Position numbers and translations under genes: made by a program. Positions 9,351-24,457 of a stretch of DNA of 64,000 bases are shown piece by piece (position 1 is the stretch's first letter; each line of letters starts with the position of its first letter). The stretch spans positions 1-64,000 of IMG/VR virus record IMGVR_UViG_3300033153_007973. One strand, written 5' to 3'. Below the pieces are notes generated by a model. That model saw nothing but the letters and a program-made list of their open reading frames with translations, ran no database searches and was not told the DNA's origin.

Positions 9351-10493
9351 TTATTCGTAATCACGAATTATGCCGACTGGAAACTGAGGAACTGCCTTGC
9401 CATTTCCATCGGTACTACTAGTAATTGTCTGGTATCGTACCGTTAGTTGTTTACCGAGGTATGTGCCTTCTCCAGCTTTGAGCATTTCTTGACGATAAAG
9501 AAGAGTTCCTTTTGGGCGAACATTGAATTCTGCACCATCTTTAGTCTTACATTTAAACATAATACAGGTATAATGAATTCCATTTATGTCTTGAGTCTCA
9601 GACTCTACGCCTATGATTTTATATTCTTTCTCTTCCATATCTTTTTTCTTGAGTAAATCATTGCTTCTGTGACCATAAAGGTATTCAGATGCAGCATTAC
9701 GGATGATCGTGCCTTCGAAGCCTTCTTTGATGAAGTCTTTATGGAATTTCTCCATATCGGCTTCAGTTTTACATGGTTCAGTAGCCACGGCTCTGAGGGG
9801 ATTCTTCACCGCTCCTTGCCAACTACTTTTGCTACCCCATCTGTGTTCAAACCTACCTGTATCTGGAGTTGCATCATCGAATATCCAGTATTCGAGTGTT
9901 TGGGTATCTTCGCGAGCTTTCTTGGTTGCTGAGGCAATTCTCTGAAGGCTCCATCCATGATAATAGAGCTCACCATCTAGAGTTTGTCCGGGTCTCATGA
10001 TTTCTTTCAGGCGTTCTATGAGCTTCTTATTCTCTTTCATAACGGCATAGTAGTCCTTACCGTTACGACTGGTCATAGTCAAGCTACCATCATCATTCAT
10101 GGTGGTCATGCAGCGAACGCCATCAAGCTTTGGTTGGACATATGCTGGCCATGTTATATGTTTCTTGCGTTCTTTGTACTTATGTGCTAACATTGGGCGT
10201 GTGGAGATATGCTTTTCGGCGTCCTTCATAGATTCTGTATACTCTTTGCGTTCCTTCTTGTGTGTCCAAGATGCTTCTGCTTCAAGATATGCTTGCTCGA
10301 GGGGTGTAGTGGCGTTTGACTTACCAATATTCTTTCCCTCTGTAATGGTTTTGCTACGTTCGATCATCTTACCATCGACTTTGCCATTATTGGTAACAAT
10401 AATTGCATACTTACCGACACTTGCCACGCGGATGGACCATTGCTTGATTCCTCCATCCTTGGACTTTGCATAGAGTATTGGAAACTTAGTCAT
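9351..10493 (-). CDS. ATP-dependent DNA ligase
   Basis: PMLA, QPKLDGVRC, LDGELY, FEGTIIR, RSNDLLKKK, TVRYQ, PQFPV. Confidence 0.93.
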   Translation of the reverse strand: MTKFPILYAKSKDGGIKQWSIRVASVGKYAIIVTNNGKVDGKMIERSKTITEGKNIGKSNATTPLEQAYLEAEASWTHKKERKEYTESMKDAEKHISTRPMLAHKYKERKKHITWPAYVQPKLDGVRCMTTMNDDGSLTMTSRNGKDYYAVMKENKKLIERLKEIMRPGQTLDGELYYHGWSLQRIASATKKAREDTQTLEYWIFDDATPDTGRFEHRWGSKSSWQGAVKNPLRAVATEPCKTEADMEKFHKDFIKEGFEGTIIRNAASEYLYGHRSNDLLKKKDMEEKEYKIIGVESETQDINGIHYTCIMFKCKTKDGAEFNVRPKGTLLYRQEMLKAGEGTYLGKQLTVRYQTITSSTDGNGKAVPQFPVGIIRDYE

Positions 10494-11486: not shown

Positions 11487-12039
11487 GTAGTCTCCTTTAA
11501 GTCTGTACTGCCGATACCAGGGACTTCGCTCATGATTTCCCCGATCTTCTCAGCTTCTTTATTGTTATTATATATGTTGCTTCGTGATAGGGTATAGTTT
11601 TTGTAGGACATACAATCTTTCGAGTATGCCTTGTCAGTTCCTGCACGGTTTTCATGTCCAAGTTTACGGTATCGACCGCATGCTGGGCATCTTATGTGTT
11701 TAATCATCGTTGACTCTCCTATATCCGTTAGTTACATTTGAGTATGACCATGATACTCTACCATTTGGCCATTGTATAAGGCAATGGTGTGGCATTACAA
11801 GAGTAATGTCTTGACCATCACTGTTCCTATAGTAAGTATTTGTTCCTTCTCCAATCCAGATCTTAACTCTAATCGGGTCTTTTGGCGGAATGATAATATA
11901 CTCAATGCTATTGTGCTGATTTTCCTTGAAGAGCTGTTCTGCACTCTTCCAGTATGGTTTGGGTCCTTCTGCTGATTTTTGTTGTGTGATAGGTCCACAG
12001 GATAGAACTAGAACGAGCACCACTATTATATATTTCATT

Positions 12040-12774
12040 TTAGTTATAAGGATGGAATGGCAGCTGTTCTTTAAAGTCATTGTATCTAACTCTGCTGACA
12101 ATCGTTCCTATTTGTTCTTCTGTTACTCGAGTATTACGAGATAATGGTTGACTATCGTATACATATTTGAGAATGGCATCCATCTCAGCATAAGTCATTC
12201 CGATGTCACCTTCATCTGTCTGATCCTTCCATAGTTCAGCAGTTGCTGGTCTATCGATAATCTCTTCAGGTACTTTGAGAATTTTCGCCATCTCATATAC
12301 GTCTGTTTTGTAGACATTCCAGAGAGGAGCAATATCTTCTGCACCATCACCATGAAGAGTATAGTATCCTAGCATTCTCTCGGTCTTATTGCTTGTACCG
12401 AGTACGATTGATTGATGGGCTTTAGCCTGATCATATAGACAAATCATGCGCACTCTGGCCATGATGTTGCCTTTACGTATTAAACTGAGATCTGTATTAA
12501 GGTCTGCACATGCATTTACTGCATGTGAGATAGGTATGGTCATGTGATTTACATGCATCTGTTCTGCGAGGCGACCTGCAATAGTGGTTGATGATGTACG
12601 AGTATACGGTAAGCTGTATGTTCGTACACAGTCATATCCTATGGCCTTCACTGCCAACATAAGACAGACCGCTGAGTCCAAGCCTCCGGAGAGACCCAGA
12701 ACCACTCCTTGCATGTCTCCTACTTTTTCTACGATAAACTTTGTGAGTTCATCTATCTTATATTCTATATTCAT
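12040..12774 (-). CDS. nadE: NH3-dependent NAD+ synthetase
   Basis: VVLGLSGGLDSA, GNIMARVRM, VLGTSNKTE..LGYYTLHGDG, PATAELW..QTDE. The ORF-track start overlaps a tRNA; true start likely 12774. Confidence 0.93.
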   Translation of the reverse strand: MNIEYKIDELTKFIVEKVGDMQGVVLGLSGGLDSAVCLMLAVKAIGYDCVRTYSLPYTRTSSTTIAGRLAEQMHVNHMTIPISHAVNACADLNTDLSLIRKGNIMARVRMICLYDQAKAHQSIVLGTSNKTERMLGYYTLHGDGAEDIAPLWNVYKTDVYEMAKILKVPEEIIDRPATAELWKDQTDEGDIGMTYAEMDAILKYVYDSQPLSRNTRVTEEQIGTIVSRVRYNDFKEQLPFHPYN

Positions 12775-12794
12775 CTCATATCCTCCCAGATATG

Positions 12795-12866
12795 CAGCCG
12801 GTGTTGGAATCGAACCAAACGTTCTCAGGATCAAAACCTGATGTCCTACCATTGAACGAACCGGCT
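12795..12866 (-). tRNA. tRNA-Gln(TTG)
   Basis: AGCCGGT/ACCGGCT acceptor, TCAGG-TTTTGAT-CCTGA anticodon arm, TTCGATT T loop. Confidence 0.9.
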
Positions 12867-12868
12867 AT

Positions 12869-14023
12869 TTATGCTCCTGCCTTGAAATTATAGATAGGCT
12901 TAACAAACTTCTTGACCTCGACGGTGTCCTCCATTGCCTTGATAATCATATCTTTATCTTTGTATGCGCCTGGAGCTTCATCGAGAGTGTTCTTTGTTGC
13001 TGATGTTGTAAATACGCCGGCATCCTTCATGCCTGCCTGCATGTCTTCTAGGGAGAGCTGTTCCTTAGCTCTCTTCCTGGAGAGGACTCGGCCGGCACCA
13101 TGTGGTGCTGAGAAGTTCCAGTCCTTATTACCTTTGCCCTTACCAAGAATTAAGCCATCCTTCATATTAAATGGAATGACTACTTCTAGATCCTTAGATG
13201 CATTAATAGCACCCTTGCGGATGATACCAGCATGTGTATCTATATAGTTATGTACTGAATGAATCTGATGTCGTGGTTCGAGACTACACCCCTTTTGCAG
13301 ATGTTCCAGAATCTTCTTAGTTAGTAGTTCTCGATTGATTTGTGCGAAGGTTGTAGCAACTCGCATGTCTTCTAGATACTCTTTAGATCCAAATTCCTCT
13401 GTGAGGAACTCGAGACGGTGATATGCAGCACCAATGAACATCTTCTTCATTGCTTCTTTGGCTTTGTTCTGGTGGTGCATGCAGATATCATTACCAAACT
13501 TTCTGGATCCTGAGTGTATCGTGAGCCATTTCTGATCTTCCTCATCGATGCCTATCTCAATGAAGTGGTTCCCACCACCTAGGCTACCCATTGCATGGAG
13601 GTTTCTGTTAGTGTCTGTCTTCATGCGAGTACCAACTTCTGTGATTCTCTCCATGAGAGGGCCTAAGATGCCTCTGGGATTTGGTGTCTTAGCGTTTACA
13701 CTGAAACCGCTTGCGATGCTATTATGAATAAAGTTGTCAAGCTTCTCGAGGTTGATATCGTCATCATTTAGTTTCGTGGAGAGCACGCCACATCCGATAT
13801 CTACACCCACAATGCAAGGAATGACATATTCATTCGTGGTCATAGTGAATCCAATACAGCTACCCATACCAGCATGACAATCAGGCATAATTACGATATT
13901 GGACTTTGCAAATGCAGGATGGTTAAGGAAGCCATAAATCTGAGTAGTGACAGATTCTTCCAGATGAGATTCATCTGGAAGCATGATCTTAGCTACGTTG
14001 TGCTTTGCTTTGATTACGAACAT
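12869..14023 (-). CDS. rtcB: RtcB RNA ligase (3'-phosphate/5'-OH)
   Basis: IMPDCHAG, VGVDIGCG, GSLGGGNHFIE, IHSGSR, HNY, RKGA, SAPHGAGR, DEAPGAYK. Confidence 0.96.
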   Translation of the reverse strand: MFVIKAKHNVAKIMLPDESHLEESVTTQIYGFLNHPAFAKSNIVIMPDCHAGMGSCIGFTMTTNEYVIPCIVGVDIGCGVLSTKLNDDDINLEKLDNFIHNSIASGFSVNAKTPNPRGILGPLMERITEVGTRMKTDTNRNLHAMGSLGGGNHFIEIGIDEEDQKWLTIHSGSRKFGNDICMHHQNKAKEAMKKMFIGAAYHRLEFLTEEFGSKEYLEDMRVATTFAQINRELLTKKILEHLQKGCSLEPRHQIHSVHNYIDTHAGIIRKGAINASKDLEVVIPFNMKDGLILGKGKGNKDWNFSAPHGAGRVLSRKRAKEQLSLEDMQAGMKDAGVFTTSATKNTLDEAPGAYKDKDMIIKAMEDTVEVKKFVKPIYNFKAGA

Positions 14024-14580
14024 TGTTCTTCCTCCTTCTCCTTCTTGGCTTTGTCTATTTCCAACATACGATGGTACATTACATATACCATAGGATCGAC
14101 AGCTTCATCAATATTATCAGTCCAGTAACAGTGTGCTTTCTTTTCCAGCTCCGAACCATCACCCTCGCCTTTACCAGTGCGTTTAACTTCGGATAGGTCT
14201 ACAGTGAATAGGTGATATACTGTGTCACATGATTTCGTTCCGCGGCAAGTGCCTAAAGACACGAGTTTATCTACGTGAATAGCATATCCTGCTTCTTCCC
14301 ATAACTCTTTGGTAGCCAAAGCAGAGTGGAGAAGCTGGGGTTCCATTCCTCCTGTTAGAGAACTGATCTCTTGTTTCATCGACCAGCAAGGTGTGACTTC
14401 CTTCCGTAGGAGAAATTGGACACCATCTTCTGCATCCTCAGAATATCGGTATGGTAGAATGGCTATAATCTCACCATTACAGCGTTTCTCATGAGAGAAT
14501 ACGTATCCCTTGATGCCCTTTGCAGGGTCAACAGCTCTCTTCAGGGATACCCATTCGTTTTCGTATAGTGTTTCTATCAT
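14014..14580 (-). CDS. NUDIX hydrolase
   Basis: GGMEP....ALATKELWEEAGY Nudix box. Confidence 0.8.
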   Translation of the reverse strand: MIETLYENEWVSLKRAVDPAKGIKGYVFSHEKRCNGEIIAILPYRYSEDAEDGVQFLLRKEVTPCWSMKQEISSLTGGMEPQLLHSALATKELWEEAGYAIHVDKLVSLGTCRGTKSCDTVYHLFTVDLSEVKRTGKGEGDGSELEKKAHCYWTDNIDEAVDPMVYVMYHRMLEIDKAKKEKEEEQCS

Positions 14581-14594
14581 TTTTATCTCCTTTA

Positions 14595-14668
14595 TTGACC
14601 CGGCGAGATTCGAACTCGCGACATTCAGATTAGGAATCTGATACTCTATCCAGCTGAGCTACGAGTCA
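14595..14668 (-). tRNA. tRNA-Arg(CCT)
   Basis: TAGCTCAGCTGGATAGAG D arm; TCAGA-TTCCTAA-TCTGA; TTCGAAT. Confidence 0.92.
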
Positions 14669-14895
14669 GTATTATCTACGTGCTGAAGGCATAATGCTGA
14701 GATCAGCTGCGACAACTGCAAAGTCTCTGCGATTGATACCATGTTGTTCCCATTTGTAATCGTTATCTAACTCAGTTATGGCACGATTCATCTGACGAAA
14801 CGTAAGTATCTTGTCTTCTTCAGTTGCAGATACCGAGATCTTTTGTCTGTTGCGGCAAATGAATTCACCGCGATCATTCATAAAGACATAGACTC

Positions 14896-15435
14896 TCATT
14901 GCTGGCCATCCCTTCTTCCGTGAATAATATGGCTGATATATGATGTTGTGCATTTGTATTTGCGTGCAATTTCTTGTCCTTCAATGCCTGCTCTCCAGAG
15001 ACGTTTTACTTCTCGTCTCATTTTCTTGCGAGACTTTCTTCTGGCAGCATTGATTTTACGTACACGGGTTTTCTTATCGACAGCTGTCTTGATTCGATCA
15101 GCTACATCATTACTATGATTTCTAGATGCATCAATTACTGCAAGCATTTGTTTAATGTCTCTTTGTCTGTGTATTCCCATATAAGGGTATAGCTTAGCTA
15201 AGAGATTCTCAATTTCGTATCGCTTATGAAGACCCCACATATATGCTGTACCATGTACGCGAGGGCGGTTCTTAATTGGATGTACTGTACCGCCGGCGAT
15301 TCCCTTTATCTTGTACATGATATCTCGTTTGTATGATGTGGTGCGGAGTTGAGTAATATTACTATATTTCTGTATGATAAAGGATCCTCGACTCTCAAAG
15401 AACCCAGCTAACCATTTTAAATCACCTATCTTCAT
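14896..15435 (-). CDS. LAGLIDADG-like homing endonuclease with C-terminal HTH
   Basis: LKWLAGFFESRGSF (degenerate LAGLIDADG), LYPYM, EIARKYKCTTSYISHI. Confidence 0.65.
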   Translation of the reverse strand: MKIGDLKWLAGFFESRGSFIIQKYSNITQLRTTSYKRDIMYKIKGIAGGTVHPIKNRPRVHGTAYMWGLHKRYEIENLLAKLYPYMGIHRQRDIKQMLAVIDASRNHSNDVADRIKTAVDKKTRVRKINAARRKSRKKMRREVKRLWRAGIEGQEIARKYKCTTSYISHIIHGRRDGQQ

Positions 15436-15685
15436 CTTTTCTTCCTCTCTTTTTGGACTAGGAAAAACATAGACCAGCTACCAAATTGTATGCCATTTGA
15501 CATCGATGAGTGAACGTATATGTCTGGTTTGTTCTTATCGCTGCAAGCTTCATACTTACCAATGTTAAAGAGATCTCCTGATTGCTTAATGTCTTTCGGT
15601 CTTGCTGGACGATACTCGGTCATATTTGGCTCTATGATATTATAGCGTGTATTCTTGTGCTTCATTTGTTTCTCCTCCCAGAGAT

Positions 15686-15706
15686 CTGGCGTGACAGGAA
15701 TCGAAC
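15686..15706 (-). pseudogene. tRNA 3'-end remnant
   Basis: GTTCGATTCCTGTCACGCCAG: T loop, 3' T stem and acceptor strand only. Confidence 0.45.
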
Positions 15707-15718
15707 GTGTTAGTAATA

Positions 15719-16351
15719 TTATGCGTTTGCCTCTATTTCTTCCTGGATTTCTTCTTTCCTGATTTCATCTAGAAGATCATCTAGGAGAATAGCTTTCTTA
15801 TATGTCATCTCGTACCCGAGAATCTTCGGTTGCTTGGCTGTCCACTCGTCCAGTAGCTTCTGAAGTTCATTCATATCGAGGCTGTCTCTTGCATCTTCAT
15901 GGAAGTTCTCGAGTATGTGATACATTACATCGTCAGCATCAGGAGTCGGTGTGGGACATGAGTTACATGCCCACACATACTTGGGTCTGTCCTCTGGCTT
16001 TCTGTCGCACAGTTCGTCGTCGATTCCTCCATCGGTATTGACGTATCCGTCATTGGAGAAGTCATCGTGATACACGAATTCTCCTTTGTAGTCTTTGAGC
16101 TTAATCTTCTCAGCCGCTTCGAATGCTTTGGCTTCTTTCTCGGATTCCCTCTTGTCGCTACATGCTTGACAGATCGTATAGTGCTTCCTTTTAATGATAG
16201 CACCACATGTGCAGATATTATTGCAGCACTCTTTGGCTATGTTTTGAGCATCAGGTACCTTCGAGCTCCAATGGGTACCGCACTTTCCACAGGCATACGC
16301 CAATACGCCTTGAGGGTTTGAGTCCTTCGAAACTAATTCGATTACGTTCAT
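15719..16351 (-). CDS. Hypothetical Cys-rich (Zn-binding) protein
   Basis: CGKC, CTC, CQAC; start at 16351 follows AAGGAG. Confidence 0.6.
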   Translation of the reverse strand: MNVIELVSKDSNPQGVLAYACGKCGTHWSSKVPDAQNIAKECCNNICTCGAIIKRKHYTICQACSDKRESEKEAKAFEAAEKIKLKDYKGEFVYHDDFSNDGYVNTDGGIDDELCDRKPEDRPKYVWACNSCPTPTPDADDVMYHILENFHEDARDSLDMNELQKLLDEWTAKQPKILGYEMTYKKAILLDDLLDEIRKEEIQEEIEANA

Positions 16352-16362
16352 CTTCGTCTCCT

Positions 16363-16390
16363 TGCGGGTCTGAGAGGATTCGAATCCCTC
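16363..16390 (-). pseudogene. tRNA 3'-half remnant (Trp-like acceptor strand)
   Basis: GAGGGATTCGAATCCTCTCAGACCCGCA. Confidence 0.5.
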
Positions 16391-16408
16391 ATACTCTTTT
16401 CTGTTTAT

Positions 16409-16482
16409 TATCCCTGGGAGGGGTCGAACCTCCAGTCTCTCGGTTCGTAGCCGAGCGCTCTTATCCATTGAGCCACAGGGAC
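16409..16482 (-). tRNA. tRNA-Arg(ACG)
   Basis: GTCCCTG/CAGGGAT; CTCGG-CTACGAA-CCGAG; TTCGACC. Confidence 0.92.
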
Positions 16483-16861
16483 ATTAAAATGAGTAGCGAC
16501 CTTAGTGGGCGGGAAAGCACCGACAGGGAACAGCCTATCCCAGGTCAGGAGCTACTCTTCAGTAACCTGCAACTTCTAATATAATAACCGTTTAACGTAG
16601 TCACCAGCGGTCGCGCCAGGAATCTAGAGTTCCTGTCTAAATACTCATTTTTACCGGTCTGAGTATCCACACAACTTAAATGCTACAACGGCCTTCAACC
16701 GCGCTTTCCACGCAGTATCAGTTTCTTCTTTAAGTATGTATATTGCTATTTGTTTGTCATCTTATCTCACTATAAAGAACATTGTATACGTTACACCCAT
16801 TACGAATCCAAACATCATAAGGGCTATACGTACGTGATATTCTTGCATCTTTTCTCCTTTG

Positions 16862-16936
16862 AGCCGGAAACCGGACTCGAACCGGTAAATGATGGCTTTG
16901 CGGGCCATTGCCTTCCCATTATTTGGCGATTCCGGC
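16862..16936 (-). tRNA. tRNA-Cys(GCA)
   Basis: GCCGGAA/TTCCGGC, U73; ATGGC-CCGCAAA-GCCAT; TTCGAGT. Confidence 0.9.
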
Positions 16937-16939
16937 ATG

Positions 16940-16968
16940 CGGGCCCAGAGGGATTTGAACCCCCAACA
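16940..16968 (-). pseudogene. 3' half of an interrupted tRNA (probably Trp)
   Basis: TGTT-GGGGG-TTCAAAT-CCCTC-TGGGCCC-G begins right after the HNH stop; can pair with the GGGTCTA 5' half at 17578-17615. Confidence 0.7.
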
Positions 16969-17451
16969 CTACATGATATTATATCTTTTGGCCCATTTTC
17001 GTACTGCATTATCGGTTACTCCGAATTCTCTTCCGATAGTGCACCATGATTTGGTCTGTATTGCTATCTTTAGTTCTTCTCTGGAAGGTCTTTCCACCTT
17101 TCTGGATCCTACTGCGGAACATCTATATGAGCAATACTTCTTGTTCTCTGTGAGTTTTCCGCATTGCTTACATACTTGAGTTGGTACAGATTTTTCGCAG
17201 GAATATGTTCCATCATTTTCTAGCTTTGCGATTCCACCCATGTGGAATCTTGCATGTTCTCCTAGACTCCTGAATAACATGAGATTATCAATTTTGTTGT
17301 TAGTGCGATCGTTATCTCTATGATGAACAGTTTCTGATGACGTTAATGGTCGTCCAAACTTTTGTGAGATAACGTATCTATGCTCTAACATCATTCCGTT
17401 TTTACGCGTACTATTGCCTTTTGATGTTTCTTTATATTGCCATTTGCTCAT
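16969..17451 (-). CDS. HNH homing endonuclease with Zn ribbon and C-terminal HTH
   Basis: EHRYV..GRPL...ETVHHRDNDRTNNKIDNL; CKQC..YCSYRC; IGREFGVTDNAVRKW. Confidence 0.88.
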   Translation of the reverse strand: MSKWQYKETSKGNSTRKNGMMLEHRYVISQKFGRPLTSSETVHHRDNDRTNNKIDNLMLFRSLGEHARFHMGGIAKLENDGTYSCEKSVPTQVCKQCGKLTENKKYCSYRCSAVGSRKVERPSREELKIAIQTKSWCTIGREFGVTDNAVRKWAKRYNIM

Positions 17452-17469
17452 ATTCGAACCTCCATACCT

Positions 17470-17498
17470 ATTATAGTATGCAGGTTCGAATTTGTCAA
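17470..17498 (-). promoter_or_regulatory. Consensus sigma70 promoter inside an inverted repeat that covers the SD
   Basis: TTGACA-17-TATAAT; ATTCGAACCT.CATAC / GTATG.AGGTTCGAAT inverted repeat. Confidence 0.85.
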
Positions 17499-17500
17499 CT

Positions 17501-17571
17501 CGGGGTGACCAGGAATCGGACCCGGGTCAAGCGGGTTGGAACCGCGTATGTTGCCACTACACCATCACCCC
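17501..17571 (-). tRNA. tRNA-Trp(CCA), atypical (T loop TCCGATT)
   Basis: GGGGTGA/TCACCCC, G73; GCGG-TTCCAAC-CCGC. Confidence 0.8.
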
Positions 17572-17577
17572 ATTACA

Positions 17578-17615
17578 TTGGAATCCGATGCTCTGCCAAT
17601 TAGAGCTATAGACCC
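17578..17615 (-). pseudogene. 5' half of tRNA-Trp(CCA), truncated in the anticodon loop
   Basis: GGGTCTA-TA-GCTCTAATTGGCAGAGC-A-TCGGA-TTCCAA, then unrelated sequence. Confidence 0.8.
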
Positions 17616-18300
17616 AGCTGTTACTTATCTTTCTCTGCGTCACGTTTGTGTCGTCCTTCATCATCTTCCATGTTATACCACATGTTATCCAACATGTGGC
17701 CAATCATCTGGTATGTTTCGAAGGACGAGCTTGTGAGCTGTCTTATTTCTTTCTCTGTGAAATCAATTTCAGCGATTGTTCTGCCTTTAGGTCCCGGTTT
17801 TCCCACAGATATATTCTGTGTAAACTGTGAGTTTTTCCCGCGCCATCCCGATAGATAGTAACCATCGAGACCACGAATCATCATGTAGTCGGCCTTTACT
17901 GTAGCCCATGGACGTACAATGAAGGATAGTACTACTACTAATAAGCAAATGAATAGCGTATTCCCGAACCACTTTAGCATTATTCCTCCCTTATGACAGC
18001 TTCGTGGTTGCAGCATGGCATATAGAATATTTCCTCGTCCTGATCGGTGGTGTGTTCACCATTGACGTAGAAACCATCATTCCCCGCTTTGACAGTAATC
18101 TTCTTACCACAGTTGGGACATTTGGTGTCCTCTGGAGGTGTAAAGATTATTAGCTCTTCGCCGTATTCTTCGTCCAGTTTCTTAACTGCCATATTTTCCT
18201 CCTATTCCCAAATCTTATATACTATAAACTGCAGAATACCTAATCCAATTATTACTGGAATCATCCATTTATACTTTATTGTGTCAATCATTATTCTCTC

Positions 18301-18831
18301 CTATATGATTTTCTTGTTGAAGAACTTGTATGCTTCTTGGTGTCGCCATTTGCTGATGGCCTTATAATACTCTTGTCGTCCTTTATGAGTGATAATTGTT
18401 ACCGGATACTTCTTGATCTTGTTCTCGCACCACAGTAAGAGCAAGCGACCGGTTCGGCCATTTCCATCCACAAATGGATGTGTTACTTCGAATGCATAGT
18501 GTACATTCATGCAGTCAATTGGCTTCTTTACTTCGTTGGCTGCCTTCACTACTCTCTCCAGCATACCAAGAATCTTGGTAGGAGGCGGACAGCTAAAGCC
18601 TCCTACTCTAACAGCAACAGGTCTGATAAGTCCTGTATAATGAGGAGGTAAGATCCCTTTCATCATGGTCTTATGCCAGTTAAGGATGTCCTGAATTATC
18701 AGGTTTTTCTTGGTTGTCAATGCTTTTGCTGCAGCTTTTAAGTGTTGGTCGAACTCCGGTGTTCCTGGATCCTCAAAGATGTCCTCGATAGCATTTGACT
18801 CACTAACTAGTTCTTCTATTCTGTTTTCCAC
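18301..18831 (-). CDS. Fic-domain protein
   Basis: HPFVDGNGRTGR canonical motif; ESNAIE. Confidence 0.93.
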   Translation of the reverse strand: MENRIEELVSESNAIEDIFEDPGTPEFDQHLKAAAKALTTKKNLIIQDILNWHKTMMKGILPPHYTGLIRPVAVRVGGFSCPPPTKILGMLERVVKAANEVKKPIDCMNVHYAFEVTHPFVDGNGRTGRLLLLWCENKIKKYPVTIITHKGRQEYYKAISKWRHQEAYKFFNKKII

Positions 18832-19196
18832 TTGTTACTCCTTAGTCTTTTTATATGGGTCAAATAGTTCATCTATACTGAATTTTCTCGACTTATGCTG
18901 CTTTCGTTTTGGCCGCTATTCTTGATATATGCTTTCTTCATCTTCTTTGTTATCTTATCTGACATATGCTACTCCTTCTTGATTATGAAACTAGTTCCTA
19001 CCATTACACTTTGCTCAATTTCTCTTCTTAGCCTTCTCAGCTTTAGGAAACTGAACATATATCGGAATTTAGGTATCTTGATGACGATAGTGTTATTTTC
19101 TCCTGGTTCTATTTTATACCAGTTGAAACCAAGGAATAACATGATTTGTTCATAATCATATATACTAACTAATGTTCTTAACATCTGTTACTCCTT

Positions 19197-19268
19197 TCGG
19201 GGTGAGAGGGATCGAACCTCCGATCTCTGCGTCCCAAACGCAGCGCCCTACCGCTAGGCTACACCCCG
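19197..19268 (-). tRNA. tRNA-Pro(TGG); its 5' end contains the HNH stop codon
   Basis: CGGGGTG/CACCCCG; CTGCG-TTTGGGA-CGCAG; TTCGATC. Confidence 0.92.
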
Positions 19269-19753
19269 TTTTTCATGTAGTGCTCTTCTGCATGACAGTT
19301 TCTGCAGAGCACTTCTAAATTTCTCAATCTGTTATCCTTTCTGTTTCTGTTCTTATGATGTACTTCTAATGCTGATACACACTTCTTATATGAGCATTTG
19401 CTGCATTCCTTCCCATAGTGGTCGAATGCTTTCTGTCGATAACCCCCACTATCTTCACGGTAGTTTGGGTGTTTCTTTCCAAAGTACAATGTATTTCTAT
19501 GAGCATTCGAACAAGATCTACCGCAGAAGCTCTTGCCGCTTTTAGATCTCTTCAGTTGACTTGGTTTGGCATAGAATTCTTTGCTGCACCAAGCACACTT
19601 AACTTCTTTTCCTTTCAGCCTGGATGCTTTAATACATTCTTTGGAGCAATAGTTCTTGTGTCCAAGCCATTGATTTTGTTGATGATACTTAATGTATTTC
19701 TCATAGGTCTTGCCACATTGTGCACATTTGACGGTTACATTTTTATGTCTCAT
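19259..19753 (-). CDS. HNH homing endonuclease with Zn-finger repeats
   Basis: CAQC..YCSKEC, CAWC..FCGRSC, LEVHHKNRNRKDNRLRNLEVLCRNCHAEEH. Confidence 0.9.
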   Translation of the reverse strand: MRHKNVTVKCAQCGKTYEKYIKYHQQNQWLGHKNYCSKECIKASRLKGKEVKCAWCSKEFYAKPSQLKRSKSGKSFCGRSCSNAHRNTLYFGKKHPNYREDSGGYRQKAFDHYGKECSKCSYKKCVSALEVHHKNRNRKDNRLRNLEVLCRNCHAEEHYMKNGV

Positions 19754-19759
19754 GTACCT

Positions 19760-19788
19760 ATTGTATCATGATATCTGCTTTCCGTCAA
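19760..19788 (-). promoter_or_regulatory. sigma70-type promoter giving a probably leaderless HNH mRNA
   Basis: TTGACG-17-TACAAT with TG extension; ATG follows 6 nt after the -10 box and has no SD. Confidence 0.75.
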
Positions 19789-19791
19789 CCA

Positions 19792-19832
19792 TCCCAAAGC
19801 AGGCGTCCTAGACCAGGCTAGACCATCTCCCG
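19792..19832 (-). pseudogene. 5' half of tRNA-Pro(TGG), truncated at the anticodon loop
   Basis: CGGGAGA-TG-GTCTAGCCTGGTCTAGGAC-G-CCTGC-TTTGGGA, then the HNH promoter. Confidence 0.8.
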
Positions 19833-20473
19833 TTGTATTATTTATCCCATACTATGTTCTTGATCCGCTTACATTCCCCTACTTTTAGTTTAGGTCCGAA
19901 CGATTTCGGCCATCCATAAAAGCTTGTTTCCCATTCTGATTTTAGGAACATGAAATGTGGATCATATTCATCATAATAGATATTGCGCCAGCCTTTTGGG
20001 TTCATTGCGATAGTAGTATATGGTAACGGATTATTATCGTCGCCGTTTCTGCCTACCCATAAACCTGCTTTCATTTTTGACAATATGATCTCCTTTTTGT
20101 CTATGGCAAATCCCGTTTTCTGCCACACCACGTACATCTTGTTCTTACCCCTTTTCGGTATCCCAAGAGGAATACAATTATACTATATGTTGATAGTCCA
20201 ATTGCTATCAACATAATGCTCATGTATTCCTCCTGGTGTTCAGTTGTTTTATCGTAACTGGTTTATTATCCTTTTCTAAGAATGCTTTCATGCATTCTGG
20301 GCATAGAGACATGGATCCTTTCTTTTTGTATCCTTCGCTTGCCTTCTTCTCTGTAATGATAACCGATGGTTTATTCTTGCATCTCTTCATAGAAGGAATA
20401 CCTAAAGTTATAAATGAATACTTTCTTGACTCGGCCTGACATCGTGTTTTATCCGGTGGTATAAGTTTCTCCG

Positions 20474-20686
20474 TCATGGTGCAATTCCTTCATCCCACAT
20501 ATATGTATCTGGTCCATCTTCACCATCACTATATTCTTTTACCCATTTCTTATATGCTTCATTACTTCTCATTAAAGCTCTGACAACCTGATCGATGACC
20601 CACATCTTATGGTGTCCTCCATCAAAGCCTCCATTATCATATATCATATCCATAGCTTCCTTAATTCTTTCTTCTGGTGTTTTCAT
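20474..20686 (-). CDS. Conserved small phage protein
   Basis: GGFDGGHHKMWVIDQVVRAL...WDEGIAP pattern. Confidence 0.65.
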   Translation of the reverse strand: MKTPEERIKEAMDMIYDNGGFDGGHHKMWVIDQVVRALMRSNEAYKKWVKEYSDGEDGPDTYMWDEGIAP

Positions 20687-20956
20687 CTTATTCTTCCTTG
20701 ATGGCTTTGATGAGAGCTTTTTCTATTGCTATCTCATCATCACCAAATGGGCATCCGAACTCAATATTTCTTAATGCTATATCCATGAGTTTCAGTATTC
20801 GGTCTTGTTCTTCATTCTTTCCATCCTTCTTTCCATATCTGTATCCGTATGCCTCGTTGAGTTTTCTATCCTTCTTTAGATCACCGAGTGTCATATCCGT
20901 GACCTGAAGATTGTTTAACTCTGCTTCTTTGGGACTATCCATCTTATTCTCCTTTG

Positions 20957-21028
20957 AGCCGGGAACTGGACACGATCCAGCAACCTACTGCTTACAGGGC
21001 AGTCGCTCTACCATTGAGCTATCCCGGC
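20957..21028 (-). tRNA. tRNA-Thr(TGT), atypical T loop
   Basis: GCCGGGA/TCCCGGC; ACTGC-CCTGTAA-GCAGT; T loop ATCGTGT. Confidence 0.85.
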
Positions 21029-21226
21029 GAAATTGTTACTTCTTCGGCTTTACATCTACCCATTCGTTACCATGTTTAATACGGATAGTGGTATTGAGTT
21101 TGTTTGCGCTCCTCTGGGCACGTGCTAACTTGTTCTTGTATGTTCTTTCTCTCTTTTCTTCTTCTGTGTATGTATTGCTTCTGGTCTTTTCGCCTGACAT
21201 TTTATTACTCCTTATTCTTTTGTTTA

Positions 21227-21299
21227 AGCCAACGGCAGGGATCGAACCTGCGTACTCCTCTTTACGGGAGAGGCGCTATTCCATCTTAGCTACGCTGGC
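21227..21299 (-). tRNA. tRNA-Thr(CGT)
   Basis: GCCAGCG/CGTTGGC; CCTCT-CCCGTAA-AGAGG; TTCGATC. Confidence 0.9.
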
Positions 21300-21749
21300 G
21301 AATTGCACTACCTTGTAGTGGGGCTACAGGTAGTGCGTCGCCAGCTCGGTTGTGGTGTGCGGAACTGAGTTGGGGAGGTATTGCAGCTGTTCGTGGATTC
21401 GAACATCTGACCATAGTATAGCATCCCCTCCCAGAATGTCAACTATTTCTTCCTAAATATTTTATGCCGTATTCTGTACTATGTTTTCGGTATCCCCATA
21501 GACCAGAAATGATACCATGATCGATAATTGAGTTTCTGAGTAGATGCGAGAAATCAGATGGTAACATATAATATTCTGTTTCTGTAGCTACATCTTTGAG
21601 GAAGCGACCGCGTGGTCTGGCGAATCGCATCGTTGCTTCAAATGTTCCTGAGCGCCACTCAATATCTGGACTATGTAGATTACTGTGGTACTCGCTCATA
21701 ATCATTCTGTTCTCGTTTGTATTAAATGGAACTCTCTTGTCCCAGGCCA

Positions 21750-22130
21750 TTACTTCTCTCCTTCTGTACCACAGTAGCTGCACTTTCCTCCGTCGGCAGC
21801 ACCTCTACCATTACACATGACACAGTCACCATCTACTGTATTATGTTGTCTTCGGGCAACCCTCATCAGGATAAGATACCCGATGAGATCTTGCTCAGTG
21901 TCTTCATGAATAGCCACTTCTGGCATATTCTTGATGTTCTGGATGCGCTTAAGCTTATCGTCAATCCTTACATCTATCTGCTCTTCAGCGCTAAGGGATG
22001 AGAAGACATTTATGGGCTCCAGCGCACTGTTGCCATATTCTTTGTTCTTCGCGAGTAGGAGGTTCTTCACCATGTCGCATTCCTCGACAATCATCTTTTG
22101 TACTCTTGTCAGTTCTTCTTCTTCTGGCAT
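21750..22130 (-). CDS. DUF1599 / nucleotide-modification-associated helical domain protein
   Basis: LLLAKNKEYGNS, VRIDDKLKRI, EDTEQDLIGYLIL. Confidence 0.7.
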   Translation of the reverse strand: MPEEEELTRVQKMIVEECDMVKNLLLAKNKEYGNSALEPINVFSSLSAEEQIDVRIDDKLKRIQNIKNMPEVAIHEDTEQDLIGYLILMRVARRQHNTVDGDCVMCNGRGAADGGKCSYCGTEGEK

Positions 22131-22997
22131 ATGATATATCTCCTATTAGTTTTGATCCCTCGAGCTTGTATATTTCACCTTTCTCTATCCTGAGGTGACC
22201 ATACTTATACTTGTCATACCTGACCAGGAATTCTGGATGTCTACTGTGATATGTATTCTTCTCCTTCTTGCATGGAATATGTTCTTCGAATCCATATGAT
22301 TTAGACCAGTGTATCCATTTGCCTGTTGTTACGAATGTAGCTTCGATGCCGCGGAGACGTGCACGTCCGATATATACTCCTGGATCTAGATAATCGTATC
22401 TATGGTGCCATAATCCGGGCCAGGGTGGTCTTACCATATCTTCCTCAGCATTTTGTTTACCTTCCTTAGGATTGGATCTACCCACTTACCTTCTACTGCA
22501 AAGCTGATCCATCCCCGGGTAGCTATAATGATTAGGAATAGTAATGTTGTATCTCCTACTCCGATAGCCCATGAGGTAAACATGAATATCATGTATATAA
22601 GTAATATCTTAAGCATCATATTAAGGATCATATTACCCCCTTGGTCTGACGCAGGATCGTTCACAGTTGGGACATTGTATTAGGTGTCCGATATATCGAT
22701 TCTTTCTATCGAGTTTGACCCAGTCGTTACAGTCGGCATGTTTGATCTTGCCAAAGACATTCCATTCCCATTTGCAGGAGTTGCATGTGAAAAGAGTTCC
22801 GCGGCCGAAGAATCGTGCAGTATCTCTAAGGAATTTGTTGATATCTACTTTGTCCCAGGTTCGATTAAATGAGAATCCTTCATTAAGTTTCTTCTTGATG
22901 TATTTGCTTAGCCAGCTCATATTTTCCTCTTTTCTTCTTGACATTCTGAGGATATATCATACATCTATGGTATCTTGTTCTTAAGGGGGTCTTTATC

Positions 22998-23450
22998 ATG
23001 ACTATTAACAACGTAAGTCTTGAGTATGCCGCCGGTTTTTTCGATGCAGATGGTGTAGTAGCTCTTCACCGTTGGAGAGAGGGTTGCTGGCGAGCGCCCG
23101 TGATCCGGTTCTCGAATATCTGTAAAGCTACTCTGCAAAAGATCCAGGCGGCTGCAGGGGAGAAGAGCTATTTGTCTGTCCAATCTGGATGCGATAAGAA
23201 ACGGCATCATAGCAAGCGTTATTACCTGGAGTTTTCGTATCATTCGGCTATTCGCTTTGCTGTTAAGCTTCTGAAGTATTCACATCATCCTCAAAAGCGT
23301 AAGCAACTTGACCTCGTAGCTAATAAGTATCTCGAGGTGACTTCTAGGGGTGGAAGCTATACACCCTCTATGCGCAAGGCCAAAGAACGATTTGAATCAA
23401 AGTTCCAAGCTATCCGCGTCTCTGCCAGCACTAAGCGTTGGTCATCCTGA
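22998..23450 (+). CDS. LAGLIDADG homing endonuclease, inserted antisense to the surrounding genes
   Basis: YAAGFFDADG motif; KRKQL; GGGGG SD. Confidence 0.8.
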   Translation: MTINNVSLEYAAGFFDADGVVALHRWREGCWRAPVIRFSNICKATLQKIQAAAGEKSYLSVQSGCDKKRHHSKRYYLEFSYHSAIRFAVKLLKYSHHPQKRKQLDLVANKYLEVTSRGGSYTPSMRKAKERFESKFQAIRVSASTKRWSS

Positions 23451-23881
23451 CCAGTAACTCCAATAGAGGCGAAGCGCTGGGCTTCTTAGTCGTAATAGTC
23501 TTCTTCTACTGCGTAGTAGTCTTTGTCTGATGCTTCTGTATTAGTAGAAGCTACGACTTCTACTCTGGCAAGAGCTCGTTTATTCTTGTAGTATCTCATA
23601 AGATTATTCTTTATGAGGAGATCTTCTTGAGACAGCTCTTGCTTAGCAATAGGTTTGATCTGACCTAAACTGCGTTCGTTAGCGAGAGGAGTGCTTGTTT
23701 GAGTGGAGTCAATGACTTCAGATACAGCTTTGGTCTTGCGATGATCTTCGATTGTTTTGTTCTTGTCTTTCTTATCGTCATCATTATTAAGAAGGAAGAA
23801 GAACACACCTGGGAGGATTAACAACCATGGGATTCCTGAGCTATCATCGGACATCTTAATCTCCTTATCTTATATGATATG

Positions 23882-23954
23882 CTCCCCAGGAGAGACTCGA
23901 ACTCTCAACCTACTGGTTAACAGCCAGTTGCTCTACCAATTGAGCTACCGGGGA
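23882..23954 (-). tRNA. tRNA-Asn(GTT)
   Basis: TCCCCGG/CTGGGGA, G73; ACTGG-CTGTTAA-CCAGT; TTCGAGT. Confidence 0.93.
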
Positions 23955-23959
23955 ATAAG

Positions 23960-24079
23960 ATGATTAACTGTGCCGAGTGTCGTTGGCAGACAACGCTCAT
24001 CAGGGTTTGTTCGCTGCCGCGACCCTGACCATCATAATACAACCAATCTGTCGTATATACGAGAGACACAGTTAATCAT
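23960..24079 (-). ncRNA. Candidate structured RNA between tmRNA and tRNA-Asn
   Basis: 13-bp terminal stem ATGATTAACTGTG/CACAGTTAATCAT enclosing three hairpins. Confidence 0.5.
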
Positions 24080-24081
24080 TT

Positions 24082-24457
24082 TGGACCCGGCGGCATCGAA
24101 GCCGCGTCCGCGATCTTTTCCCCTCAGAAAGTTTACTACCATTGGGAGCGAGCAAGCTCGCACGTTCCACCATCCCTTATTTAGCGACTAGGGAAGTCGT
24201 AACGAGTCCCTTTCGGGAGTAACTCCCTTCAGTGCGTGCCTCCCCGGGTACAGAAGGGTACTCTTGCCGGTTCAGCCCTGCACTCTTAAGCGCAGGCAAC
24301 GTTCTGGTTCATGGAACCGAAGTTCCCGACCAGAATCGTGTCGTTGGCGTTAGTTTCGTCAACTTTGGTTTGAATCCTCAGTTTTATGACTTAAGCATTC
24401 TTAGGTCAGGTAGCTTTCTTTGTTTACTAGAACCGCGTCGAAACCAATTTCGGGCCC
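24082..24457 (-). ncRNA. ssrA: tmRNA
   Basis: 5' GGGCCCGAAATTGGTTTCGAC and 3' GACGCGGCTTCGATGCCGCCGGGTCCA; G3-U acceptor wobble; tag ORF 24348-24286 reads ANDTILVGNFGSMNQNVACA*. Confidence 0.92.

What the first reader, a model, noticed from the sequence alone, without database searches (positions are those of the whole stretch)
16940..17615. HNH cassette splits tRNA-Trp at the anticodon and carries a replacement tRNA-Trp
Seen, in transcription order: tRNA-Trp 5' half ending ...TCGGA-TTCCAA (17615-17578); a complete, sequence-unrelated tRNA-Trp(CCA) (17571-17501); a perfect sigma70 promoter; the HNH gene; and, immediately after its stop, a tRNA 3' half (16968-16940) whose acceptor strand TGGGCCC can pair with the 5' half's GGGTCTA. 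The junctions carry a near repeat ATGTAATG/ATGTAGTG. Inference: an intron-less homing strategy in which the endonuclease targets a conserved tRNA gene, destroys it and compensates with a divergent, cleavage-immune isoacceptor.
Basis: partly seen in the sequence, partly recalled or inferred. Interest (0 to 1): 0.75.

Follow-up and report, generated by a model that had tools for sequence, protein, structure and literature searches.

The report
Homing cassette splits phage tRNA-Trp gene
A selfish nuclease gene that travels with its own tRNA-Trp gene has landed inside a jumbo phage's original tRNA-Trp gene, breaking it in the anticodon arm and leaving the travelling copy as the phage's only tRNA-Trp: a clean fossil of how such nucleases reshuffle phage tRNA sets.

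Summary
On the minus strand, a tRNA-Trp 5' part (17615-17578) and a 3' part (16970-16940) flank a ~608-nt insert. The insert holds a complete, unrelated tRNA-Trp(CCA), a 12/12 sigma-70 promoter set in an RBS-sequestering hairpin, and an intact HNH_3 endonuclease gene.

Forty-five intact metagenomic tRNA-Trp genes sharing the 5' part's last 20 nt continue exactly into the 3' part. Only 5 nt (positions 38-42, one strand of the anticodon stem) are missing, so the old gene is dead. It is neither an intron nor a joinable split tRNA.

- The HNH family lives in phage tRNA arrays, and some members sit in group I introns in tRNA anticodon loops.
- The window's HNH belongs to a well-supported five-member clade in which four members adjoin a tRNA-Trp.
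- Its sister locus carries a tRNA-Trp with the same rare T loop.
- One relative (L005) has a second case of a truncated tRNA-Trp 5' piece abutting a complete tRNA-Trp plus HNH.

Not shown: cleavage specificity, immunity of the replacement, or an HNH-free relative, since this phage has no close kin in any collection searched. The junction near-repeat is not above chance. Closest precedents are T4 SegB and T5 F-Tfl. This is a new variant of intronless homing.

The parts
17578..17615 (-). 5' part of the disrupted tRNA-Trp gene ('Trp1'), positions 1-37: acceptor strand, D arm, 5' strand of the anticodon stem, loop TTCCAA.
   Evidence: Read. Best blastn hits are annotated phage tRNA-Trp genes. Its last 20 nt are identical to 45 intact metagenomic tRNA-Trp genes. 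nhmmer with a tRNA-Trp 5'-half profile hits it outside any called tRNA.
17572..17577 (-). 6-nt spacer TGTAAT, the left edge of the inserted segment. Together with flanking bases it forms ATGTAATG (17578-17571).
   Evidence: The near repeat with 16974-16967 is not significant (P about 0.06).
17501..17571 (-). Complete replacement tRNA-Trp(CCA) ('trp2'). Discriminator G, unusual T loop UCCGAUU, one C-U mismatch in the anticodon stem.
   Evidence: ARAGORN. Infernal 52 bits. Only tRNA-Trp in the 234-kb genome. Rare T loop shared with the tRNA-Trp of sister locus L015.
17470..17498 (-). Consensus sigma-70-type promoter: TTGACA, 17-nt spacer, TATAAT.
   Evidence: Only 12/12 site in window 12000-24000. 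The -35-like hexamer and downstream sequence are conserved upstream of the homologous HNH genes in L015 and L007.
17449..17494 (-). Hairpin with 19-nt arms. The -10 hexamer lies in the loop; the GGAGG ribosome-binding site and the bases up to the ATG lie in the 3' arm.
   Evidence: dG -25.2 kcal/mol, z -6.0, 0 of 200 shuffles as stable. Inverted repeat I1, 89% complementary. Outer stem kept in L015 and L007.
16969..17451 (-). Free-standing HNH endonuclease gene, 160 aa: N-terminal HNH_3 domain, four-Cys cluster, C-terminal helix-turn-helix.
   Evidence: Pfam HNH_3 E 7.9e-8. All 17 invariant family columns retained. AF2 model mean pLDDT 90. 1117 relatives at E<=1e-10. Single copy in the genome.
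16940..16970 (-). 3' part of the disrupted tRNA-Trp gene, positions 43/44-73: variable loop GTGTT, T arm, acceptor strand TGGGCCC, discriminator G. Its first base or two are the end of the HNH stop codon.
   Evidence: Aligns without gaps to intact tRNA-Trp genes. nhmmer 3'-half hit. 7/7 pairing with the 5' part.
16861..16936 (-). tRNA-Cys(GCA), 3 nt downstream of the 3' part. Shows the native array spacing Trp1-Cys.
   Evidence: ARAGORN. Infernal 53.5 bits. Trp-Cys adjacency also occurs in arrays L015, L109 and L141.

Best explanation
The locus is the scar of an invasion by a two-gene mobile unit: a free-standing HNH homing-endonuclease gene and the tRNA-Trp gene linked to it.

Inferred sequence of events:
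1. The phage's original tRNA-Trp gene (Trp1, of a common bacterial type) lay between the 131-aa ORF and tRNA-Cys.
2. It was broken in the anticodon arm, most likely by this HNH or a close relative during a mixed infection.
4. About 608 nt went in (spacer, trp2, promoter/hairpin, HNH) and 5 nt of Trp1 (positions 38-42) were lost.

Trp1 is therefore dead, and trp2, which diverges throughout the anticodon and T arms, supplies tRNA-Trp. Linkage of the nuclease to a divergent copy of its likely target is the usual logic of intronless homing. Here the same linkage also made a gene-destroying, non-homologous insertion tolerable.

Expression is probably gated as in T4 homing-endonuclease genes. Read-through transcripts fold the hairpin and hide the ribosome-binding site. 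Transcripts started at the promoter inside the hairpin lack the 5' arm and can be translated.

Shown here: the anatomy, the 5-nt loss, the family's association with tRNA genes, the Trp-linked clade, and a second example in L005. Inferred: who cut, where exactly, the repair route, and the immunity of trp2.
For: 1. One gene in two pieces. Intact tRNA-Trp genes identical over 20 nt to the end of the 5' part continue with A-TCCGA, a 5-nt variable loop and GGGGGTTC.A.TCCCTC, i.e. straight into the 3' part. Only ATCCG is missing. The acceptor strands pair 7/7 (P about 6e-4).
2. The insert is a unit seen elsewhere.
- Same order, tRNA-Trp then HNH: L005/L006 and L021 (directly adjacent); Bacillus phage pW2 and L015/L016, each with one further tRNA between.
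- Opposite order, HNH then tRNA-Trp: L013, L058, PBC2.
- L021 is a lone pair between protein genes.
3. Phylogeny. The window's HNH sits in a starred clade of 5 in which 4 are Trp-adjacent. Its sister, L015, has a tRNA-Trp with the same rare T loop.
4. Independent second scar. L005 carries a 5' piece that matches tRNA-Trp genes best among 157 tRNAs, is cut after U33, and directly abuts a complete but different tRNA-Trp followed by the HNH.
5. The family targets tRNA anticodon loops. Homologues are encoded in Rfam group I introns (56-84 bits) that interrupt tRNA genes in the anticodon loop. Free-standing homologues sit in tRNA arrays (67 of 80 loci), often with the stop codon flush against the next tRNA.
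6. The nuclease looks intact: all invariant residues are kept and the C-terminus is native.
7. Promoter, hairpin and RBS are conserved with the HNH in L015 and L007, so they belong to the unit.
8. trp2 is the only tRNA-Trp in a 20-amino-acid tRNA set.
9. Precedents: T4 SegB, a homing endonuclease in a tRNA cluster that cuts tRNA genes, carries neighbouring tRNA genes along and has an RBS hairpin (PMC2330249); SegB-driven rearrangements through microhomology between a tRNA 5' end and the segB 3' end (PMC13096335).
Against: - No close relative of this phage exists in the collections searched: GenBank phages, IMG/VR, and 5.8 billion clustered proteins. The pre-insertion state is therefore inferred from tRNA homologues in unrelated genomes, not from a sister phage.
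- Nuclease activity, cut site and the immunity of trp2 are untested.
- In the wider family, tRNA-Trp adjacency is not enriched: 3 of about 50 tRNA-adjacent IMG/VR loci. The Trp link holds for the small clade only, whose members are not independent.
- trp2 and the tRNA-Trp genes of L005 and L015 are only weakly alike in sequence.
- In L005 no matching 3' piece was found.
- Both ends of the insert are flush with functional boundaries: 6 nt before trp2, and exactly at the stop codon. Random end-joining does not predict this, and it remains unexplained.
- No reads could be laid on the region to exclude an assembly chimera. The identical HNH with like neighbours is, however, on record on a second contig.
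Confidence: 0.72

Rival explanations
1. Decayed group I intron. Trp1 once carried a self-splicing intron in its anticodon loop that encoded this HNH. The ribozyme was later lost and trp2 was acquired.
For: Homologous HNH ORFs do sit in group I introns in tRNA anticodon loops (L022, L028, L032/33, L042, L051 and others). The break in Trp1 (37/38) is next to the intron site read in L022 (36/37).
Against: No group I signal in window 16000-18500 even at E<=10 or at gathering threshold across the window. There is no room for a ribozyme core: the ORF stop overlaps the 3' part. Five exon nucleotides are missing. A complete tRNA sits where the intron's 5' part would be. The HNH groups with free-standing, promoter-bearing members, not with the intron clade.
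Confidence: 0.08
2. Intragenomic rearrangement rather than invasion. HNH-induced breaks and microhomology (ATGTARTG) reshuffled a pre-existing array that already held Trp1, trp2 and the HNH, as in SegB-driven segmental amplification.
For: SegB produces tRNA + nuclease repeat units joined by microhomology between a tRNA 5' end and the nuclease gene's 3' end (PMC13096335). The near repeat here lies at just those two positions, 604 nt apart. HNH-then-tRNA-Trp arrangements exist (L013, L058, PBC2).
Against: The repeat is not above chance (P about 0.06). Producing complementary halves on either side of a single unit from a tandem array needs several further deletions. There is only one copy of the HNH and no other Trp remnants in the genome.
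Confidence: 0.1
3. Functional split tRNA. The two pieces are transcribed and joined or paired (for example by the phage's RtcB) into a working tRNA-Trp.
For: The phage encodes RtcB (12869-14023) and an RNA ligase (41509-42609). The acceptor strands are complementary.
Against: The 3' strand of the anticodon stem is missing, so a joined product lacks an anticodon arm. No complementary leader or trailer sequences of the kind that bring split halves together were found. An intact tRNA-Trp lies between the pieces. The two G-U pairs in the acceptor stem fit decay as well as function.
Confidence: 0.03
4. Artefact or coincidence. The pieces are unrelated tRNA debris, or the contig is chimeric at the junctions.
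For: tRNA debris is common around these HNH genes. No sequencing run could be listed to check coverage.
Against: The pieces align end to end with single intact genes and pair 7/7. The same HNH with like neighbours is on record on a second contig. The ORF, tRNA and promoter are all intact across the junction-bounded segment.
Confidence: 0.04

Closest known systems
T4 SegB (GIY-YIG homing endonuclease in the T4 tRNA gene cluster; PMC2330249; PMC13096335)
   Same: Free-standing nuclease gene inside a phage tRNA array. Its targets are tRNA genes. Neighbouring tRNA genes are inherited with it. Its stop codon abuts the next tRNA. An RBS-sequestering hairpin is predicted. It drives rearrangements of tRNA + nuclease units.
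   Different: Different nuclease fold: GIY-YIG rather than HNH_3. SegB recognises the T-arm motif and cuts at tRNA 3' ends. It has no promoter of its own. Homing described so far is homologous replacement between related phages, not a disruptive insertion inside a tRNA gene with a linked substitute.
T5 F-TflI, F-TflII, F-TflIV (HNH endonucleases encoded in the T5 tRNA region; Akulenko et al. 2004, as cited in PMC2330249)
   Same: HNH-type site-specific endonucleases whose ORFs lie among phage tRNA genes.
   Different: Relationship to this family was not tested here. No split tRNA with a carried replacement is mentioned for them in the paper read here (PMC2330249); the primary paper on them (Akulenko et al. 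2004) was not read.
Classical intronless homing of free-standing phage endonuclease genes (T4 seg and mob genes; own knowledge, and the discussion in PMC2330249)
   Same: The nuclease gene sits beside a cleavage-resistant version of its target and spreads by break repair with co-conversion of flanks. Late- or middle-promoter-in-hairpin control of translation.
   Different: Here the repair was evidently non-allelic. The target gene was left behind in two pieces, and the resistant version came in as a separate, complete gene.
Homing endonucleases encoded in group I introns of tRNA genes (bacterial tRNA introns, own knowledge; phage examples found here: L022, L028, L032, L042, L051)
   Same: Same HNH family in the phage examples, and the same target region (tRNA anticodon loop).
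   Different: No ribozyme in the window. The interrupted gene cannot be restored by splicing.
Split tRNA genes of Nanoarchaeum equitans (own knowledge)
   Same: A tRNA gene present as separate 5' and 3' pieces divided near the anticodon.
   Different: Those halves are complete and carry complementary sequences for assembly. Here 5 nt are missing and no such sequences exist.

Membership tests
HNH_3 (PF13392) homing endonucleases with a C-terminal helix-turn-helix | HNH (beta-beta-alpha metal) catalytic motif | tested here: met
   Pfam HNH_3 32.3 bits against a cutoff of 24.8. H24, H43, H44, N52, N56, H66 and H70 are invariant in an 18-sequence alignment that includes the window protein.
HNH_3 (PF13392) homing endonucleases with a C-terminal helix-turn-helix | Separate DNA-binding module (zinc-binding Cys cluster and HTH) | tested here: inconclusive
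   C94, C97, C107 and C111 are conserved. HTH_23 matches only at E 0.006, below the cutoff. The AF2 model has three C-terminal helices at 124-156. No significant PDB match by sequence or by Foldseek.
HNH_3 (PF13392) homing endonucleases with a C-terminal helix-turn-helix | Site-specific nicking or cleavage of DNA | not testable with these tools
   Needs enzyme assays. Complex prediction with DNA was not folded.
Free-standing homing endonuclease gene (intronless homing) | ORF lies between genes, not in an intron or intein | tested here: met
   No group I or other intron model in 16000-18500 at E<=10. Own promoter and RBS.
Free-standing homing endonuclease gene (intronless homing) | Presence/absence polymorphism among otherwise similar genomes | not testable with these tools
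   No close relative of this phage in any collection. Seen only for distant family members, e.g. Izhevsk against PBC2.
Free-standing homing endonuclease gene (intronless homing) | Cuts the nuclease-free allele; the linked allele is resistant | not testable with these tools
   Inferred only from the position of the break and from the divergence of trp2.
Free-standing homing endonuclease gene (intronless homing) | Co-conversion or co-transfer of flanking markers | tested here: inconclusive
   tRNA-Trp is linked to the HNH in 4 of 5 clade members, and the sister locus shares the rare T loop. These members are few and related.
Group I intron in a tRNA gene | Ribozyme core | tested here: not met
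   Rfam Intron_gpI finds relatives' introns at 56-84 bits but nothing in the window.
Group I intron in a tRNA gene | Two exons that make a complete tRNA when joined | tested here: not met
   Positions 38-42 are absent.
Split (trans-assembled) tRNA gene | Halves jointly complete, with complementary flanking sequences | tested here: not met
   5 nt missing. No inverted repeat links the two flanks.
SegB-type GIY-YIG endonuclease | GIY-YIG catalytic domain | tested here: not met
   Only HNH_3 and a weak HTH match in Pfam. It works like SegB but is not a member.

The most novel reading that the evidence does not exclude
A self-compensating 'break-and-replace' homing cassette. An HNH endonuclease aimed at the anticodon arm of a widespread, host-like tRNA-Trp gene is permanently linked to an immune tRNA-Trp. 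It can therefore invade even unrelated phage genomes by non-homologous repair, killing the resident gene while supplying its function. Possibly it also cuts the host's own tRNA-Trp gene, which in this case looks like the Planctomycetota type. Recurrence in L005 would make this a mode of spread rather than an accident.
Probability: 0.25. Interest if true: 0.75.

Novelty: new variant of a known kind. Interest (0 to 1): 0.55.

Why it matters
Phage tRNA sets are now seen as counter-defence cargo, and homing endonucleases as the engines that move and amplify them (SegB work, PMC2330249 and PMC13096335). This locus adds four things.

- It is a naturally preserved before-and-after record: the old gene's two pieces still bracket the incoming unit. 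That pins the break to within about 5 nt of the anticodon arm without any experiment.
- It defines a large HNH family (more than 1000 members at E<=1e-10) whose members are either intron-borne in tRNA anticodon loops or free-standing in tRNA arrays.
- It shows a clade in which the nuclease travels with a tRNA-Trp.
- It gives a directly testable enzyme and substrate pair: the HNH, the intact Trp1-type gene, and trp2.

If break-and-replace is a regular route, it would explain how endonuclease-linked tRNA genes cross between unrelated phages, and why tRNA debris surrounds such genes.

Tried and rejected
Searches for relatives of this phage, all empty:
- megablast and blastn of the locus against GenBank phages;
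- the exact 38-mer in IMG/VR;
- the upstream 131-aa ORF and the HNH as single proteins in IMG/VR;
- the 912-aa ORF by tblastn;
- the 131-aa ORF in the 5.8-billion-protein collection, which returned only itself;
- 'relatives' in the genome search, which is not available for virus records.

Other steps that led nowhere:
- Sequencing runs: none was listed, so no reads could be laid.
- Complex prediction of the HNH with an intact Trp1-type gene was not folded. It is not evidence either way.
- PDB by sequence profile and Foldseek on a pLDDT-90 model gave no significant match, so an I-HmuI-like architecture could not be confirmed.

Ideas considered and dropped:
- The two pieces are copies of other tRNAs in the genome: no.
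- The junction near-repeat is a target-site duplication or an att core. Reading it that way gives a gene without an anticodon stem, and P is about 0.06.
- A tRNA-like minihelix formed by GGGCC inside the ORF's 3' end and the 3' part might act as an RNase P signal. It is the minimum-free-energy fold, but z is only -0.9, and the GGGCC follows from conserved Trp-Ala codons.
- Pairing of the 5' part with trp2's T loop: no fold support.
- ARAGORN's intron-bearing tRNA-Thr and tRNA-Gly calls in the own genome are not supported by Rfam.
Full report
**Setting.** The window is the first 64 kb of a 234,008-bp IMG/VR phage record with direct terminal repeats. ARAGORN finds 31 tRNA genes in the genome, covering all 20 amino acids. 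Exactly one of them is a tRNA-Trp. Nearby genes include RtcB, an RNA ligase and a DNA ligase, and a Fic-domain protein. The phage has no close relative in any collection searched: no DNA match in GenBank phages, and no relatives of the flanking ORF or of a 912-aa ORF.

**The observation.** In transcription order on the minus strand:
- The stop of a 131-aa ORF, then 5 nt.
- 38 nt (17615-17578) that read as tRNA positions 1-37: acceptor strand GGGTCTA, D arm, anticodon-stem strand TCGGA, loop TTCCAA.
- A 6-nt spacer.
- A complete tRNA-Trp(CCA) at 17571-17501 (ARAGORN; Infernal 52 bits).
- TTGACA, 17 nt, TATAAT at 17498-17470, the only 12/12 site in 12 kb.
- A 160-aa HNH_3 ORF at 17451-16969.
- Overlapping its stop codon, 30-31 nt (16970-16940) that read as variable loop, T arm, acceptor strand TGGGCCC and discriminator G.
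- 3 nt, then tRNA-Cys.

The two acceptor strands pair 7/7, which has a chance of about 6e-4. Neither piece copies another tRNA of the genome. The best phage hits of the 5' piece are annotated tRNA-Trp genes.

**Proof that the pieces are one gene, and what is missing.** The last 20 nt of the 5' piece occur in 46 metagenome contigs. In 45 of these they are part of a complete tRNA-Trp gene that continues A-TCCGA, a 5-nt variable loop (CGGTT, GGGTT or GTGTT), then GGGGGTTC.A.TCCCTC. Aligned together, the window's 5' piece covers the first 37 positions. The 3' piece covers everything from A43 onward, including a T arm identical to those of L119 and L130. Five columns (ATCCG, positions 38-42) have no counterpart in the window.

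The inserted segment is therefore about 608 nt (17577-16970), and the old gene lacks one strand of its anticodon stem. This excludes a spliceable intron and a joinable split tRNA. No ribozyme is detectable, and no complementary flanks exist.

Most intact holders show the bacterial order Thr-Tyr-Gly-Thr, gap, Trp. A 26-mer that includes the missing stem occurs in 23 GTDB genomes, 19 of them Planctomycetota. The broken gene is thus of a cellular, possibly host-like, type.

**The nuclease and its family.** The ORF keeps every invariant residue of an 18-member alignment and ends where its relatives end. Its AF2 model is confident (pLDDT 90) but has no significant PDB neighbour. An exhaustive search finds 1117 relatives at E<=1e-10, none above 52% identity.

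Their genomic settings are informative:
- In GenBank, the best hits lie inside tRNA arrays: Bacillus phages McCartney, Emiliahah, PBC2, pW2 and Izhevsk, and Pseudomonas phage phiKZ gp296.
- Of 80 IMG/VR loci, 67 have tRNAs within 1.5 kb.
- The stop codon is often flush with the next tRNA.
- In about nine distinct loci the ORF sits inside a 730-790-nt insertion in a tRNA gene. The insertion was tested with Rfam in five of these, and all five score as a group I intron (56-84 bits against a cutoff of 50). In L022 I read the exons directly and place the intron between positions 36 and 37.

The family as a whole is therefore aimed at tRNA genes, and at least part of it at the anticodon loop.

**The link to tRNA-Trp.** In a maximum-likelihood tree of 48 homologues, the window's HNH falls in a supported clade of five (95/84). 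Four of the five adjoin a tRNA-Trp:
- the window itself;
- L015 (Trp-Cys-HNH);
- L005 (Trp-HNH-Arg);
- L013 (HNH-Trp).

The sister, L015 (97/86), has a tRNA-Trp with the T loop TCCGATT. That loop is found in only 3 of 408 distinct tRNAs examined, and trp2 is another of the three. Outside the clade, L021 carries a lone tRNA-Trp + HNH pair between protein-coding genes, and pW2 has Trp, a tRNA-like element, HNH, then Arg.

The promoter-like hexamers, the hairpin's outer stem and the GAGGTTCGA-type ribosome-binding region are conserved upstream of the HNH in L015 and L007. The regulatory region therefore belongs to the mobile unit. Across the wider family, tRNA-Trp is not a preferred neighbour, so the link is a property of this clade only.

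**A second scar.** In L005/L006, two samples carrying an HNH 51% identical to the window's, the complete tRNA-Trp is directly preceded by a 35-nt piece. Among 157 tRNAs, the best matches of that piece are the tRNA-Trp genes of phages Izhevsk and pW2. It stops after U33, 2 nt before the complete tRNA begins. This is the same left-hand architecture as in the window, in a different genome and with a different old gene. No matching 3' piece was found there.

A comparison of PBC2 with Izhevsk shows another rough insertion. Izhevsk has Asn-Asp-Trp-Gly with 3-5-nt spacers. PBC2 has Asn-Asp-HNH followed by an unannotated tRNA-Trp-like sequence with an aberrant D arm, then Gly.

**Mechanism proposed.** The parsimonious reading is invasion by a tRNA-Trp + HNH unit after a break in the anticodon arm of the resident tRNA-Trp gene. 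The break would have been repaired without flanking homology, so both stumps survive and 5 nt were lost. The linked tRNA-Trp is then both the probable immune allele of the target, as in intronless homing, and the functional substitute.

Expression control probably follows the T4 pattern summarised in PMC2330249. The hairpin (dG -25 kcal/mol, z -6) pairs the ribosome-binding site in read-through transcripts. The promoter's -10 hexamer lies in the loop, so its transcripts start within the 3' arm and are open for translation.

The steps that remain inferred are the identity of the cutting enzyme, the cut positions, the repair route and the resistance of trp2. One feature I cannot explain is that both ends of the insert are flush with functional boundaries.

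**What is not supported.** The near repeat at the junctions is within chance (P about 0.06). It is worth remembering only because SegB-driven amplification uses microhomology at the equivalent two positions (PMC13096335). Rejoining by RtcB would not restore a tRNA. Whether destroy-and-compensate is a strategy or an accident made survivable by linkage cannot be decided from two scars.

**Comparison and novelty.** Three things are already known: homing endonucleases in phage tRNA clusters that cut tRNA genes and carry neighbouring tRNAs along (T4 SegB; T5 F-TflI/II/IV), intron-borne endonucleases in tRNA genes, and hairpin-gated expression. Three things are new here:
- a preserved non-homologous insertion inside a tRNA gene with a same-identity replacement on board;
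- a Trp-linked clade of a large, uncharacterised tRNA-associated HNH family;
- phage tRNA group I introns that carry the same family.

I rate this a new variant of a known kind, of moderate interest.

Noticed in passing
L022 1308-2159; also L023, L028, L032-L035, L042/43/48, L050/51/54, L063/66, L078/80, L087: IMG/VR phage contigs carry tRNA genes interrupted in the anticodon loop by 730-790-nt insertions that encode homologues of the window's HNH. In the five loci tested (L022, L028, L032, L033, L051) the insertion scores as an Rfam group I intron at 56-84 bits. Two literature searches here returned no paper whose title or abstract describes phage tRNA introns of this kind.
   Followed up: partly
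L005 1173-1207 (same in L006): A truncated tRNA-Trp-like 5' piece, cut after U33, abuts a complete but different tRNA-Trp that is followed by a 51%-identical HNH. This is a second, independent example of the window's left-hand architecture.
   Followed up: yes
L004 (Bacillus phage PBC2, NC_071040) locus 2976-3060: An unannotated tRNA-Trp(CCA)-like sequence with an over-long, aberrant D region lies right after the HNH gene. PBC2 has no other tRNA-Trp in the stretch, whereas phage Izhevsk has an intact Asn-Asp-Trp-Gly run.
   Followed up: partly
L013 1310-1400 / L014 614-704: The tRNA-Trp 12 nt downstream of a 49%-identical HNH has a 17-nt extra hairpin in the variable region and a mismatched anticodon-stem end. 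This is unusual for tRNA-Trp and may be an altered target site.
   Followed up: no
L012 975-1006 and 290-415: Directly after the HNH stop there is a 'top-half' tRNA minihelix (acceptor strand, T arm, acceptor strand) with no D or anticodon arm. Upstream lies a roughly 125-nt tRNA-like element with a 10-bp acceptor-type stem and a T arm.
   Followed up: no
window 19259-19753 (-), promoter-like site 19788-19760: A second, unrelated HNH ORF (164 aa, HNH motif near the C-terminus, zf-FCS-like). It has its own TTGACG-17-TACAAT site, and its stop codon overlaps the start of tRNA-Pro (19268-19197).
   Followed up: no
window 24079-24457 (-): An Rfam tmRNA match just above the gathering score (49.4 against 47 bits), next to tRNA-Asn. 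This may be a phage-encoded tmRNA-like gene.
   Followed up: no
window 12869-14023 (-), 41509-42609 (-), 9351-10493 (-), 18301-18831 (-): RtcB-type tRNA ligase, an RNA ligase, an ATP-dependent DNA ligase and a Fic-domain protein lie in or near the tRNA region, suggesting a tRNA repair and counter-defence neighbourhood.
   Followed up: no
L147-L169 (GTDB genomes): The 26-mer spanning the broken gene's D stem to the (missing) anticodon stem occurs in 23 species genomes, 19 of them Planctomycetota. This is a hint, no more, about the host or the origin of the old tRNA-Trp.
   Followed up: partly
G000 64289-64572 and 210503-210854 (outside the window): ARAGORN with introns allowed proposes intron-bearing tRNA-Thr(GGT) and tRNA-Gly(CCC). 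Rfam finds no intron there, only a weak tmRNA-like match at about 210502-210606. The ARAGORN calls are probably false.
   Followed up: yes
L010 (Bacillus phage pW2) 1343-1413: Between tRNA-Trp and the HNH lies a 71-nt tRNA-Pro(TGG)-like gene that seems to lack a normal D arm. It is called by ARAGORN but not annotated in the record.
   Followed up: no
G000 70391-70412 (outside the window): An isolated T-arm-like fragment lies just upstream of tRNA-Val in the second tRNA array, showing further tRNA debris in this genome.
   Followed up: no
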